Position numbers and translations under genes: made by a program
Shown here: positions 24,596 to 27,899 of the stretch, piece by piece
Layout of the letters: the number at the start of each line of letters is the position of its first letter
How positions within the stretch are numbered: the stretch's first letter is position 1
Notes under the pieces: model-generated
What the model was told of the DNA's origin: nothing
Seen by the model: the letters and a program-made list of their open reading frames with translations, nothing else
The model's database searches: none
DNA from: Diadema antillarum
Taxonomy: Eukaryota
DNA: 64,000 nt
Direction: 5' to 3'
Assembly (NCBI RefSeq): GCF_040938485.1
Contig: NW_027271696.1
Coordinates: 1,550,001 to 1,614,000 of the forward strand

Positions 24596-24632
<37 letters not shown>
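24596..24632. repeat. (TA)n microsatellite, left boundary of the array
   Basis: About 18 TA repeats abutting the first unit. Confidence 0.95.
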
Positions 24633-24635
<3 letters not shown>

Positions 24636-27028
24636 AACGAATCAGTAGAAGAAGAACGCCGTAAAAAATAATAATAAATCCTAGATCTTGAAGATCTTAA
24701 AAACGGAGCATAGCTCTCAAATACTGAAAGGCAAGGTCACACTCTTCATCAGTGCCCATGGTGTGACAAAAGATCTTAATCAAACCCGTTTCTGAAACAG
24801 ACATGAAAACACGTCTGATCATGGGCAGACGGATTTTGAAACTCACCTTTCAAAGAAGTCACCGCGCTAAACAGATGGAGGTAGCGCACAGTGTAGTGTC
24901 CATAGTGACGCATCCAATGACGCGTAGTCATGACTGCAAGATGACATGGCAAATCTCCGGCTCCGAAACAGTGAATCTGAAAAGGGCCTCATCGCCAACA
25001 GTCGGAAGAGTAGCAGAAAAAGTACACAGTACAGAAACATAATAAGAAAATTGGTCTGCTCGGCATCTTGATGATGATAAGTAAACGAATCAGTAGAAGA
25101 AGAACGCCGTAAAAAATAATAATAAATCCTAGATCTTGAAGATCTTAAAAACGGAGCATAGCTCTCAAATACTGAAAGGCAAGGTCACACTCTTCATCAG
25201 TGCCCATGGTGTGACAAAAGATCTTAATCAAACCCGTTTCTGAAACAGACATGAAAACACGTCTGATCATGGGCAGACGGATTTTGAAACTCACCTTTCA
25301 AAGAAGTCACCGCGCTAAACAGATGGAGGTAGCGCACAGTGTAGTGTCCATAGTGACGCATCCAATGACGCGTAGTCATGACTGCAAGATGACATGGCAA
25401 ATCTCCGGCTCCAAAACAGTGAATCTGAAAAGGGCCTCATCGCCAACAGTCGGAAGAGTAGCAGAAAAAGTACACAGTACAGAAACGTAATAAGAAAATT
25501 GGTCTGCTCGGCATCTTGATGATAATAAGTAAACGAATCAGTAGAAGAAGAACGCCGTAAAAAATAATAATAAATCCTAGATCTTGAAGATCTTAAAAAC
25601 GGAGCATAGCTCTCAAATACTGAAAGGCAAGGTCACACTCTTCATCAGTGCCCATGGTGTGACAAAAGATCTTAATCAAACCCGTTTCTGAAACAGACAT
25701 GAAAACACGTCTGATCATGGGCAGACGGATTTTGAAACTCACCTTTCAAAGAAGTCACCGCGCTAAACAGATGGAGGTAGCGCACAGTGTAGTGTCCATA
25801 GTGACGCATCCAATGACGCGTAGTCATGACTGCAAGATGACATGGCAAATCTCCGGCTCCAAAACAGTGAATCTGAAAAGGGCCTCATCGCCAACAGTCG
25901 GAAGAGTAGCAGAAAAAGTACACAGTACAGAAACGTAATAAGAAAATTGGTCTGCTCGGCATCTTGATGATAATAAGTAAACGAATCAGTAGAAGAAGAA
26001 CGCCGTAAAAAATAATAATAAATCCTAGATCTTGAAGATCTTAAAAACGGAGCATAGCTCTCAAATACTGAAAGGCAAGGTCACACTCTTCATCAGTGCC
26101 CATGGTGTGACAAAAGATCTTAATCAAACCCGTTTCTGAAACAGACATGAAAACACGTCTGATCATGGGCAGACGGATTTTGAAACTCACCTTTCAAAGA
26201 AGTCACCGCGCTAAACAGATGTAGGTAGCGCACAGTGTAGTGTCCATAGTGACGCATCCATTGACGCGTAGTCATGACTGCAAGATGACATGGCAAATCT
26301 CCGGCTCCAAAACAGTGAATCTGAAAAGGGCCTCATCGCCAACAGTCGGAAGAGTAGCAGAAAAAGTACACAGTACAGAAACGTAATAAGAAAATTGGTG
26401 TGCTCGGCATCTTGATGATAATAAGTAAACGAATCAGTAGAAGAAGAACGCCGTAAAAAATAATAATAAATCCTAGATCTTGAAGATCTTAAAAACGGAG
26501 CATAGCTCTCAAATACTGAAAGGCAAGGTCACACTCTTCATCAGTGCCCATGGTGTGACAAAAGATCTTAATCAAACCCGTTTCTGAAACAGACATGAAA
26601 ACACGTCTGATCATGGGCAGACGGATTTTGAAACTCACCTTTCAAAGAAGTCACCGCGCTAAACAGATGTAGGTAGCGCACAGTGTAGTGTCCATAGTGA
26701 CGCATCCAATGACGGGTAGTCATGACTGCAAGATGACATGGCAAATCTCCGGCTCCAAAACAGTGAATCTGAAAAGGGCCTCATCGCCAACAGTCGGAAG
26801 AGTAGCAGAAAAAGTACACAGTACAGAAACGTAATAAGAAAATTGGTCTGCTCGGCATCTTGATGATAATAAGTAAACGAATCAGTAGAAGAAGAACGCC
26901 GTAAAAAATAATAATAAATCCTAGATCTTGAAGATCTTAAAAACGGAGCATAGCTCTCAAATACTGAAAGGCAAGGTCACACTCTTCATCAGTGCCCATG
27001 GTGTGACAAAAGATCTTAATCAAACCCG
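24633..27028 (+). repeat. 448-bp tandem array, left arm (5 full units plus 156-bp partial)
   Basis: Units start with GTAAACGAATC at 24633, 25081, 25529, 25977, 26425, 26873; only a few substitutions between copies. Confidence 0.97.
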
Positions 27029-27033
27029 GAGAC

Positions 27034-27855
27034 AGCCGGAGATTTGCCATGTCATCTTGCAGTCATGACTACGCGTCATTGGATGCGTCACTATGGACAC
27101 TACACTGTACGCTACCTCCATCTGTTTAGCGCGGTGACTTCTTTGAAAGGTGAGTTTCAAAATCCGTCTGCCCATGATCAGACGTGTTTTCATGTCTGTT
27201 TCAGAAACGGGTTTGATTAAGATCTTTTGTCACACCATGGGCACTGATGAAGAGTGTGACCTTGCCTTTCAGTATTTGAGAGCTATGCTCCGTTTTTAAG
27301 ATCTTCAAGATCTAGGATTTATTATTATTTTTTACGGCGTTCTTCTTCTACTGATTCGTTTACTTATTATCATCAAGATGCCGAGCAGACCAATTTTCTT
27401 ATTACGTTTCTGTACTGTGTACTTTTTCTGCTACTCTTCCGACTGTTGGCGATGAGGCCCTTTTCAGATTCACTGTTTTGGAGCCGGAGATTTGCCATGT
27501 CATCTTGCAGTCATGACTACGCGTCATTGGATGCGTCACTATGGACACTACACTGTGCGCTACCTCCATCTGTTTAGCGCGGTGACTTCTTTGAAAGGTG
27601 AGTTTCAAAATCCGTCTGCCCATGATCAGACGTGTTTTCATGTCTGTTTCAGAAACGGGTTTGATTAAGATCTTTTGTCACACCATGGGCACTGATGAAG
27701 AGTGTGACCTTGCCTTTCAGTATTTGAGAGCTATGCTCCGTTTTTAAGATCTTCAAGATCTAGGATTTATTATTATTTTTTACGGCGTTCTTCTTCTACT
27801 GATTCGTTTACTTATTATCATCAAGATGCCGAGCAGACCAATTTTCTTATTACAT

Positions 27856-27861
<6 letters not shown>
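27034..27861 (-). repeat. 448-bp tandem array, inverted right arm (about 1.85 units)
   Basis: Reverse complement of the same unit; carries the same 79-codon ORF at 27402-27641. Confidence 0.97.

Positions 27862-27899
<38 letters not shown>
27860..27899. repeat. (TA)n microsatellite, right boundary of the array
   Basis: About 20 TA repeats abutting the inverted arm. Confidence 0.95.

What the first reader, a model, noticed from the sequence alone, without database searches (positions are those of the whole stretch)
24596..27899. 3.2-kb asymmetric fold-back made of 448-bp tandem units inside MGMT intron
Seen: 5.35 head-to-tail copies of a 448-bp unit, an abrupt switch of orientation, then 1.85 inverted copies. 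Units differ at only a handful of positions, so the structure is very young. It has no TIR/TSD pair, no HINE-type ends and no transposase. Inference: a pre-mRNA through this intron could form at least 830 bp of near-perfect dsRNA (in several registers) in a DNA-repair gene, and the DNA could extrude cruciforms. It may be an undescribed fold-back or satellite-like mobile element, or a local amplification.
Basis: partly seen in the sequence, partly recalled or inferred. Interest (0 to 1): 0.75.

Follow-up and report, generated by a model that had tools for sequence, protein, structure and literature searches.

The report
Young Penelope-style foldback repeat insertion
The 3.2-kb mirror-image repeat block is real and recent, sits on only one of this sea urchin's two chromosome copies, and belongs to a gene-less 443-448-base repeat family that always lands in AT-repeat tracts with the anatomy left by Penelope-like retrotransposons, so it is most likely a new passenger of a known copying mechanism, not a new class of element.

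Summary
In detail: 5.35 direct plus 1.85 inverted 448-bp units (window 24632-27862), split by a 5-nt filler and flanked by (AT)20 and (TA)19.

It is an insertion, not a local amplification. The second haplotype retained in this assembly (contig C299) has one uninterrupted (AT)n tract at the same site.

The unit is a dispersed family. There are about 260 units and at least 150 "(TA)n + unit position 1" junctions genome-wide. All 21 loci I read are flanked by (AT)n on both sides.

- All 14 two-armed copies have the same polarity: the outer ends are constant and the centre varies.
- The outer ends fall at only two or three start sites, 36-57 nt apart. In 13 of 14 two-armed copies, one end carries this "tail".
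- Inner ends cluster at short palindromes.
- About two thirds of the tabulated copies appear to be stubs shorter than one unit.
- The unit has no ORF over 79 aa, no ribozyme and no defined TSD.

This matches published Penelope-like element (PLE) insertion anatomy: AT-rich/(TA)n targets, both DNA strands extended, tandem plus inverted 5'-truncated copies, and a tail between two reverse-transcription start sites. The genome holds many long GIY-YIG ORFs in the same inverted geometry.

I read it as a non-autonomous, hammerhead-less PLE passenger (confidence 0.7). The partner element and an RNA intermediate were not shown. The dsRNA and MGMT effects remain untested inference.

The parts
24592..24632 (.). 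Left half of the target microsatellite, (AT)20
   Evidence: The empty allele L052 (contig C299) has a single (AT)~16 tract here.
24632..27028 (+). Direct arm of 5.35 units of 448 bp. Its outer end is the 'A' start site (unit position 1, AGTAAACG). The inferred RNA polarity is the - strand, so the 3' end lies at 24632.
24683..24697 (.). Perfect 15-nt palindrome AGATCTTGAAGATCT in the first unit, repeated in every unit. It is a minor hot spot for arm centres in other copies.
   Evidence: 6 of 34 inner ends fall at positions 52-80.
24736..24767 (.). 7-bp stem GTCACAC/GTGTGAC in the first unit. The centre of copy L037 lies in its loop.
24812..24831 (.). Hairpin CGTCTG-loop-CAGACG containing the palindrome TGATCA (unit positions 181-200). 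It is the main hot spot for inner (5'-truncated) ends across the family.
   Evidence: 13 of 34 inner ends fall within positions 186-196, against 0.84 expected (P about 8e-13).
27029..27033 (.). 5-nt filler GAGAC at the head-to-head junction, joining unit position 157 to unit position 331.
27034..27812 (-). Inverted arm of 1.74 units (unit position 331 down to 1, then one full unit).
27813..27862 (-). 50-nt 'tail' (unit positions 399-448) beyond the unit boundary. This is the 'B' start site and is present at this end only.
   Evidence: The interpretation follows PMC11167929.
27861..27899 (.). Right half of the target microsatellite, (TA)19
29938..30177 (+). Context: the last, active-site (PCHRV) exon of MGMT, 2 kb downstream of the insertion.
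   Evidence: PF01035, E 6.7e-30.

Best explanation
The block is one young insertion of a non-coding, non-autonomous repeat family with a 443-bp consensus unit (448 bp here). I infer that it is copied into (TA)n microsatellites by the machinery of Penelope-like retroelements (PLEs).

Proposed steps, all inferred:
1. A tandem or reiteratively used RNA, of the polarity complementary to the window's + units, is bound by a PLE RT/GIY-YIG protein.
2. The endonuclease cuts a (TA)n tract.
3. Both DNA 3' ends prime reverse transcription at one of two or three adjacent internal start sites. These share the motif TA|(N)AG(W)AAA on the cDNA strand and lie 36-57 nt apart. An end that starts at the downstream site carries the 'tail'.
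4. Both cDNAs run towards the RNA 5' end through several units.
5. They stop at variable points and are joined head-to-head, often where like-polarity strands can pair at short palindromes.

The result is two unequal tandem arms in inverted orientation, with constant outer ends, inside a split microsatellite.

Shown: the insertion polymorphism, the (TA)n target, the polarity rule, the start-site and tail pattern, the 5'-truncation pattern, and the absence of coding capacity and ribozymes. Also shown are abundant long GIY-YIG ORFs in the genome, arranged in inverted pairs.

Inferred: the RNA intermediate, the identity of the enzyme, and the single-event origin of the multi-unit arms.
For: 1. 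Empty sites. The allelic contig C299 aligns to both flanks (98% and 96% identity) with only 42 bp between them, and the sequence there is a plain (AT)n. One-armed copy L045 also has an empty (AT)n allele, and two further copies sit where paralogous TE copies have plain (TA)n.
2. Dispersal. There are 260 matches to a unit 23-mer against 1 for the control. There are 150 junctions of (TA)4 joined to unit position 1 against 0 for the control. All 21 loci read are flanked by (AT)n on both sides.
3. Polarity. All 14 two-armed copies have the constant ends outward.
4. Start sites. All 35 outer ends fall at position 1 (22 ends), 392-404 (8) or 408-413 (5). In 13 of 14 two-armed copies, one position-1 end is paired with one tailed end.
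5. Truncation. Inner ends vary, with 13 of 34 within positions 186-196 (P about 8e-13). By my hand comparison of the listings, roughly 36 of 55 position-1 ends have no downstream 23-mer nearby. Those copies would be stubs shorter than one unit, anchored at the 3' end.
6. Family structure. Subfamily-diagnostic variants are shared between loci, while locus-private variants are fixed in every unit of both arms. The window's AGTGT variant occurs only in this array.
7. Contents. No ORF exceeds 79 aa. No Rfam ribozyme appears even at E<=10.
8. Literature. PLE protein cleaves AT-rich DNA and extends both strands. It starts reverse transcription at two adjacent internal sites, and the 30-40-bp interval between them is the PLE-specific 'tail' (PMC11167929). 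Naiad PLEs prefer (TA)n, lack hammerheads, form partial tandems plus an inverted 5'-truncated copy, and show no clear TSD. Non-autonomous PLE relatives give multicopy head-to-tail insertions (PMC8557442).
9. Genome context. There are at least 146 GIY-YIG hits in ORFs up to 1031 aa. By my hand count of the listing, neighbouring hits are ordered (-,+) in 34 cases and (+,-) in 2. If these are PLEs with a C-terminal endonuclease, that means 3' ends outward.
Against:
- The GIY-YIG ORFs were not themselves shown to be PLEs or to target (TA)n. That rests on the literature and on unchecked earlier notes.
- There is no evidence for an RNA intermediate. The only RNA hit is one 161-nt metatranscriptome contig with 4 mismatches.
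- There is no hammerhead, so it is not a retrozyme in the strict sense.
- Unit RNA folds are not unusual, with z-scores of -1.5 and -1.7.
- In vitro, PLE start sites did not differ between strands. The near-obligate A/B pairing seen here is therefore not predicted by the published data.
- The window's own centre (157/331 plus filler) is not at a palindrome.
Confidence: 0.7

Rival explanations
1. DNA-level capture. (AT)n tracts break (cruciform or fork collapse), and both 3' ends prime repair synthesis by microhomology on an extrachromosomal circular or tandem DNA copy of the repeat (rolling-circle or MMBIR type). The two like-polarity strands then anneal at palindromes.
For: This gives the same topology as the favoured model: both arms grow inward from (AT)n ends with the same polarity, and centres fall at palindromes. 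Copy L033 has at its centre a 138-nt, 100% identical direct copy of host DNA from 110-250 bp upstream, which shows template switching onto DNA. Locus-private variants present in all units fit a single circular template.
Against: The start sites are not the most AT-rich parts of the unit. The A/T-only run at positions 32-48 is never used in 35 ends, whereas all starts share an AGWAAA context within a 57-nt window. That points to protein or template recognition rather than microhomology alone. The excess of 3'-anchored stubs shorter than one unit, and the one-sided tail, are retroelement and PLE signatures.
Confidence: 0.12
2. Ectopic gene conversion. The (AT)n flanks act as homology arms, so a break in any (AT)n tract can copy an existing array from another locus. 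The variety of centres then reflects later 'revision' (central deletion) of unstable palindromes.
For: Every copy has (AT)n on both sides. L031 and L038 share the same 196/192 centre but differ in unit number. Long palindromes are known to undergo central deletions (general knowledge).
Against: It does not explain the first copy or the many 3'-anchored stubs. It also does not explain one-armed copies whose truncated end abuts (AT)n directly and whose allele is a clean empty site (L045/L060). Paralogs of the L031 site have only (TA)3, too short to serve as a homology arm. No donor carrying the window's private variant exists in either haplotype.
Confidence: 0.07
3. A Foldback/TU-type DNA transposon whose long inverted ends are made of tandem repeats, moved by a transposase encoded elsewhere, with a (TA)n target preference that hides the TSD.
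For: The arms are unequal, are built of tandem units, and have conserved outer ends, as in Drosophila FB and sea-urchin TU elements (general knowledge).
Against: Seven of 21 loci have only one terminus yet look like primary insertions. The centres differ between nearly identical copies. The two termini are not the same sequence: one carries the tail. No copy has an internal coding loop.
Confidence: 0.05
4. Assembly artefact or purely local amplification and inversion at this locus.
For: No long read spanning the array could be examined. The short-read unitigs stop at the microsatellites and inside the repeat.
Against: The same architecture recurs at 13 other loci on different contigs, and the assembly is HiFi-based. 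An empty allele shows that the whole block is an insertion. The family is dispersed.
Confidence: 0.03

Closest known systems
Penelope-like element insertions, especially the (TA)n-preferring, hammerhead-less Naiad clade and the Neptune clade (Craig et al. 2021, PMC8557442; Frangieh et al. 2024, PMC11167929)
   Same: Both have an AT-rich/(TA)n target without a discernible TSD. Both show partial or multiple tandem copies plus an inverted 5'-truncated copy, so that the 3' ends face outward. Both have an optional tail of a few tens of bp at one end, explained by two adjacent internal reverse-transcription start sites, and both DNA strands are extended.
   Different: This unit encodes no RT or endonuclease and is only 443-448 bp. 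Arms reach 8 units. The tail is 36-57 nt. Tailed and untailed ends are paired almost obligatorily in the large copies. Relatedness to any autonomous PLE was not shown.
Non-autonomous PLE derivatives: Chlamys-type MRC1 of Chlamydomonas (PMC8557442) and metazoan non-LTR retrozymes (Cervera & de la Pena 2020, PMC7229834; bioRxiv 10.64898/2026.07.22.740005)
   Same: Both are non-coding units of a few hundred bp, laid down as dispersed head-to-tail arrays and thought to be mobilised by PLE enzymes.
   Different: Retrozymes are defined by a type I hammerhead in each unit and by circular RNA. No ribozyme was detected here, and the RNA fold is unremarkable.
L1 'twin priming' inversions
   Same: Both target DNA ends prime on one RNA. 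This gives an inverted 5' part joined to a direct 3' part at microhomology.
   Different: In L1 the second primer anneals at a random internal site. Here both arms start at defined sites, and each arm can be multi-unit.
Foldback elements (Drosophila FB, sea-urchin TU; general knowledge)
   Same: Both have long inverted arms of unequal length made of tandem repeats.
   Different: FB/TU elements are DNA transposons with identical termini and fixed TSDs. This family has one-armed primary insertions and non-identical ends.
(TA)n-targeting plant transposons Micron and MuTAnT (PMC4486113, PMC5907723; seen only as titles and abstract openings in the listing)
   Same: Both insert into TA microsatellites, so that copies are flanked by (TA)n on both sides.
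   Different: Those are plant DNA transposons or MITEs with TIRs. They lack the tandem/inverted, 5'-truncated anatomy.

Membership tests
PLE-mobilised (non-autonomous) element | Insertion into AT-rich or (TA)n DNA without a clear TSD | tested here: met
   21 of 21 loci have (AT)n on both sides. There are four empty sites, two allelic and two paralogous. There are 150 (TA)4-to-position-1 junctions against 0 for the control.
PLE-mobilised (non-autonomous) element | Tandem or partial-tandem copies plus an inverted 5'-truncated copy, with 3' ends outward | tested here: met
   14 of 14 two-armed copies have the constant ends outward and variable centres. There are 1-8 units per arm.
PLE-mobilised (non-autonomous) element | 'Tail' of about 30-40 bp at one end, equal to the interval between two adjacent reverse-transcription start sites | tested here: met
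   The outer ends fall at position 1 (22), 392-404 (8) and 408-413 (5). The tail is 36-57 nt and sits at one end in 13 of 14 two-armed copies, compared with PMC11167929.
PLE-mobilised (non-autonomous) element | 3'-anchored copies with variable 5' truncation | tested here: met
   The inner ends are spread over the unit with hot spots. About two thirds of the tabulated position-1 ends lack a downstream 23-mer nearby (hand comparison of the listings).
PLE-mobilised (non-autonomous) element | Autonomous PLE (RT plus GIY-YIG) present and active in the same genome | tested here: inconclusive
   There are at least 146 GIY-YIG hits in ORFs up to 1031 aa, with 34 (-,+) against 2 (+,-) neighbouring pairs by hand count. 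The RT domain, PLE clade and targets were not examined because no sequence could be fetched.
PLE-mobilised (non-autonomous) element | Sequence shared with the autonomous partner at the start-site or 3' region | not tested
One lead remains: at C38 a position-1 end lies 1.75 kb from a GIY-YIG ORF.
PLE-mobilised (non-autonomous) element | RNA intermediate | not testable with these tools
   Only one weak metatranscriptome contig was found.
Metazoan non-LTR retrozyme | Type I hammerhead ribozyme in each tandem unit | tested here: not met
   cmscan of 24550-27950 against all Rfam families at E<=10 gave no ribozyme. Reading by eye, the single CUGAUGA on the - strand has no GAAA in the remainder of the unit downstream.
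Helitron / Helentron-HINE | Defined 5' and 3' termini (TC...CTRR with a 3' hairpin, or Helentron subterminal inverted repeats) and a single orientation | tested here: not met
   The ends read AGTAAACG... and TACAGAAACG.... The other ends are variable, and inverted arms are present.
Foldback (FB/TU) DNA transposon | Two equivalent termini on every mobile copy, and a fixed-length TSD | tested here: not met
   Seven of 21 loci are one-armed, one of them with a clean empty allele. The termini differ by the tail. A TSD cannot be assessed inside (AT)n.
Local satellite amplification | Unit confined to this locus or to large homogeneous arrays | tested here: not met
   The family is dispersed over at least 100 loci on many contigs. 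The largest copy seen has 11.6 units.

The most novel reading that the evidence does not exclude
Each insertion may be built in one event by a dimeric PLE ribonucleoprotein. It would engage the two adjacent start sites of a single short RNA, one site per DNA strand, which would explain the A/B pairing of ends. It would then copy that one 443-nt template reiteratively, either on a circular RNA or by telomerase-like return to the start site. That would explain why locus-private variants, such as the window's AGTGT duplication found nowhere else in either haplotype, sit in every unit of both arms. If so, PLE enzymes would be a one-step generator of kilobase tandem arrays and near-perfect palindromes. 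In other words, they would seed satellite DNA and create long hairpin-forming sequences inside genes.
Probability: 0.25. Interest if true: 0.65.

Novelty: new member of a known kind. Interest (0 to 1): 0.42.

Why it matters
The mechanism of PLE insertion is still poorly understood. The first in vitro study dates from 2024. This family offers about a hundred very young natural insertion products, several with empty alleles in the same individual. They display start sites, tails, centre junctions and even a template switch onto nearby host DNA at single-base resolution.

The family also shows that a hammerhead-less non-coding unit can be spread as multi-unit arrays. That bears on how satellite repeats are seeded and on how long inverted repeats arise de novo inside genes.

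For MGMT itself, nothing shows a functional effect. The insertion is an ordinary polymorphic passenger, probably in an intron, although a 655-829-nt hairpin in the pre-mRNA is possible.

Tried and rejected
- **Ribozyme or retrozyme:** an Rfam scan of the array at E<=10, and of 141 kb of window plus loci at gathering scores, found no hammerhead or other ribozyme.
- **Coding capacity:** the longest ORF is 79 aa.
- **Structured (viroid-like) RNA:** the MFE z-scores of -1.7 and -1.5 for the two strands are not distinctive. A circular-fold script timed out.
- **Read support:** the runs found are short-read unitigs that break at the microsatellites and inside the repeat. They neither confirm nor refute the junction. 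They do show unit depth of about 80x the unique depth and presence of the unit in a second organism label.
- **More loci and PLE copies:** I did not try to read those letters by another route.
- **MGMT N-terminal exon:** PF02870 gave no useful hit.
- **tRNA-like heads in the window:** none.
- **Other families at (TA)n tracts in the held sequence:** nothing shares the terminal motif.
- **Window ORFs at 52.7-62 kb:** these are LTR-retrotransposon genes, not PLE.
- **Earlier findings:** the look-ups near this place, by the first set of words and by sequence were blank.
- **Helitron/HINE, FB/TU, local amplification and assembly artefact:** considered and rejected for the reasons given under the rival explanations and the membership test.
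Full report
**What is there.** Window 24632-27028 holds 5.35 head-to-tail copies of a 448-bp unit at 99% identity.
- After five unmatched bases (27029-27033), 1.85 copies follow in inverted orientation (27034-27862).
- This gives inverted arms of 829 nt at 100% complementarity in two registers, and 655 nt at 99% with a 179-nt loop.
- AT skew flips sign at the junction.
- The block lies inside a microsatellite: (AT)20 on the left (24592-24632) and (TA)19 on the right (27861-27899).
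- No ORF exceeds 79 aa.
- The MGMT active-site exon (PF01035, E 6.7e-30) is 2 kb downstream on the + strand at 29938-30177. An AG follows a pyrimidine-rich stretch just upstream of it, inferred from the translated frame.
- I could not locate the upstream exons, so 'intronic' is likely but not shown.

**It is an insertion and it is polymorphic.** The genome is the 1.75-Gb, 2963-contig assembly.
[quoted passage not shown] It retains both haplotypes of a 2.5%-heterozygous animal.
- The left flank (1.8 kb) and the right flank (1.8 kb) both match contig C299, at 98% and 96% identity, and lie only 42 bp apart there.
- The sequence at that point (L052) is one uninterrupted (AT)~16 tract plus a short imperfect extension.
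- The 3.2-kb block is therefore absent from the other haplotype.
- Its units differ from each other at only seven substitution sites, about 0.2%. That is tenfold less than the divergence between the alleles.

**It is one copy of a dispersed family.**
- A search with the unit finds near-identical units (96-98%, mostly 443 bp) on many contigs.
- A conserved 23-mer occurs 260 times, against 1 for the reversed control.
- The junction '(TA)4 + unit position 1' occurs 150 times against 0. This is a lower bound, because only one microsatellite phase was queried.
- I read 20 further loci. All are flanked by (AT)n on both sides, with unrelated sequence beyond.
- Thirteen are two-armed like the window and seven are one-armed. 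Two of the seven (L046 and L047) are 99.9% identical over 5.1 kb, so they are the same locus represented twice.
- One-armed copy L045 has a clean empty (AT)n allele, L060. Two other copies sit in TE copies whose paralogs carry a plain (TA)n at that point.

**Anatomy across copies.**
- *Polarity:* in all 14 two-armed copies the units point the same way relative to the centre. The outer ends are constant and the centre varies.
- *Outer ends:* the 35 outer ends fall at only three places, position 1 (22 ends), 392-404 (8) and 408-413 (5).
- All three places share the context TA|(N)AG(W)AAA. The 392-416 segment is a diverged duplicate of the unit start.
- The most A/T-rich stretch of the unit (positions 32-48) is never used as an end.
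- *Tail:* ends of the second and third type carry an extra 36-57 nt beyond the unit boundary.
- In 13 of 14 two-armed copies, one untailed end is paired with one tailed end. Two short copies with two untailed ends can be seen.
- *Inner ends:* these are variable but clustered. Thirteen of 34 lie within positions 186-196, inside a hairpin that contains the palindrome TGATCA (expected 0.84, P about 8e-13). Others lie at a perfect 15-nt palindrome or in the loop of a 7-bp stem.
- The window's own centre (157/331 plus GAGAC) belongs to the non-palindromic minority.
- *Stubs:* by my hand comparison of the listings, about two thirds of the tabulated position-1 ends have no 23-mer nearby. That would make most copies stubs shorter than one unit, anchored at the constant end.

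**Family structure.**
- Divergence is 0-0.8% within a locus and about 1% between loci.
- Diagnostic variants define subfamilies that are shared among unlinked loci.
- Locus-private variants are present in every unit of both arms.
- The window's private AGTGT duplication occurs seven times in the whole diploid assembly, all in this array.

**Interpretation.** Constant ends, variable truncation at the other end, and many stubs are the signature of target-primed copying from a fixed 3' region.
- The remaining features fit published Penelope-like element anatomy point by point.
- A purified PLE protein cuts AT-rich DNA and extends both strands. It starts reverse transcription at two adjacent internal sites, and the interval between them is the 30-40-bp 'tail' unique to PLEs. 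It uses multi-copy tandem RNA and does not need hammerhead cleavage (PMC11167929).
- Naiad PLEs prefer (TA)n, lack canonical hammerheads and form partial tandems plus an inverted 5'-truncated copy. They carry the tail at one end and show no clear TSD. Non-autonomous relatives give multicopy head-to-tail insertions (PMC8557442).
- The genome contains at least 146 GIY-YIG hits in ORFs up to 1031 aa. By my hand count of the listing, neighbouring hits are ordered (-,+) 34 times and (+,-) twice. For elements with a C-terminal endonuclease, that is the same 3'-ends-outward geometry.
- Earlier unchecked notes of this scan report PLE stubs and a tRNA-like passenger in (TA)n tracts of this genome. I used these as leads only.

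**What is missing.**
- I could not fetch any PLE copy, so the partner, its clade and its targets are untested.
- No ribozyme is present, so this is not a retrozyme by definition.
- RNA folds are unremarkable.
- RNA evidence is a single weak metatranscriptome contig.
- A DNA-templated variant of the same topology remains possible: broken (AT)n ends priming on circular repeat DNA.
- That variant gains some support from copy L033. Its centre holds a 138-nt exact direct copy of host DNA from 110-250 bp upstream, which is a template switch onto DNA.
- Start-site specificity and the stub spectrum argue against pure microhomology.
- Ectopic conversion through the (AT)n flanks, an FB/TU-type DNA transposon, a Helitron/HINE and an assembly artefact were each considered and fit worse. 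The rival explanations and the membership test give the reasons.

Arms able to form 655-829 bp of near-perfect duplex are real. Whether MGMT pre-mRNA folds this way, is edited or diced, or whether the DNA extrudes a cruciform, could not be tested.

**Verdict.** The element is mobile and very young, but it is best filed as a new, hammerhead-less, non-autonomous member of the PLE-mobilised repeats (confidence 0.7), not as a new class. The points of real interest are the clean natural record of PLE start sites, the near-obligate pairing of tailed and untailed ends, and the hint of reiterative copying of a single template.

Noticed in passing
L033:3560-3700 (contig C697): The centre of this fold-back holds a 141-nt filler. 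Of this, 138 nt are a 100% identical direct copy of host DNA at L033:1766-1903, which lies 110-250 bp upstream of the insertion. This is a template switch onto nearby target DNA during insertion.
   Followed up: partly
G000:C38:381339-383327: A '(TA)n + unit position 1' end at 381339 (+) lies 1.75 kb left of a GIY-YIG hit in a 176-aa ORF at 383094-383327 (+). The orientation fits a hybrid head-to-head insertion of a passenger arm plus a 5'-truncated PLE arm. By my rough estimate, chance proximity is about 0.05. The sequence could not be fetched.
   Followed up: no
G000, many contigs: There are at least 146 GIY-YIG domain hits in ORFs up to 1031 aa. Neighbouring hits are ordered (-,+) in 34 cases and (+,-) in 2 (hand count). 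This suggests abundant, probably active Penelope-like elements in inverted or tandem clusters.
   Followed up: partly
window 52700-62100, - strand: ORFs of one or two Ty3/gypsy-type LTR retrotransposons: gag with a zinc knuckle, aspartyl protease, RT, RNase H and integrase.
   Followed up: partly
window 24128-24291 and 28392-28700: Two short interspersed repeats flank the insertion site. Their unitig depth is about 4000-5000 times the unique depth in the run that holds most of the stretch, and they have thousands of candidate matches in the genome at 75-87% identity.
   Followed up: no
L054:1989-3641 and L055:2-1654: A 551-aa open frame that, by my recognition of the motif only, looks like a Pif1-type helicase of a Helitron/Helentron family. 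No family search was run on it. Copy L031 of the repeat is inserted where these paralogs have only (TA)3, so the tract was either expanded in that copy or lengthened at insertion.
   Followed up: no
window 24592-24632 plus 27861-27899, compared with L052:1455-1500; L045 compared with L060: In both allelic pairs, the filled allele carries more (AT) repeat in total (about 80 bp) than the empty allele (about 32-50 bp). This is consistent with a variable-length duplication of the microsatellite target at insertion, or with later microsatellite growth.
   Followed up: partly
L046 (C783) and L047 (C770): These two contigs are 99.9% identical over 5.1 kb and both carry the same one-armed 2.4-unit copy. 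They are a homozygous or duplicated locus that differs by a 3-bp indel in the unit's A-rich run.
   Followed up: partly
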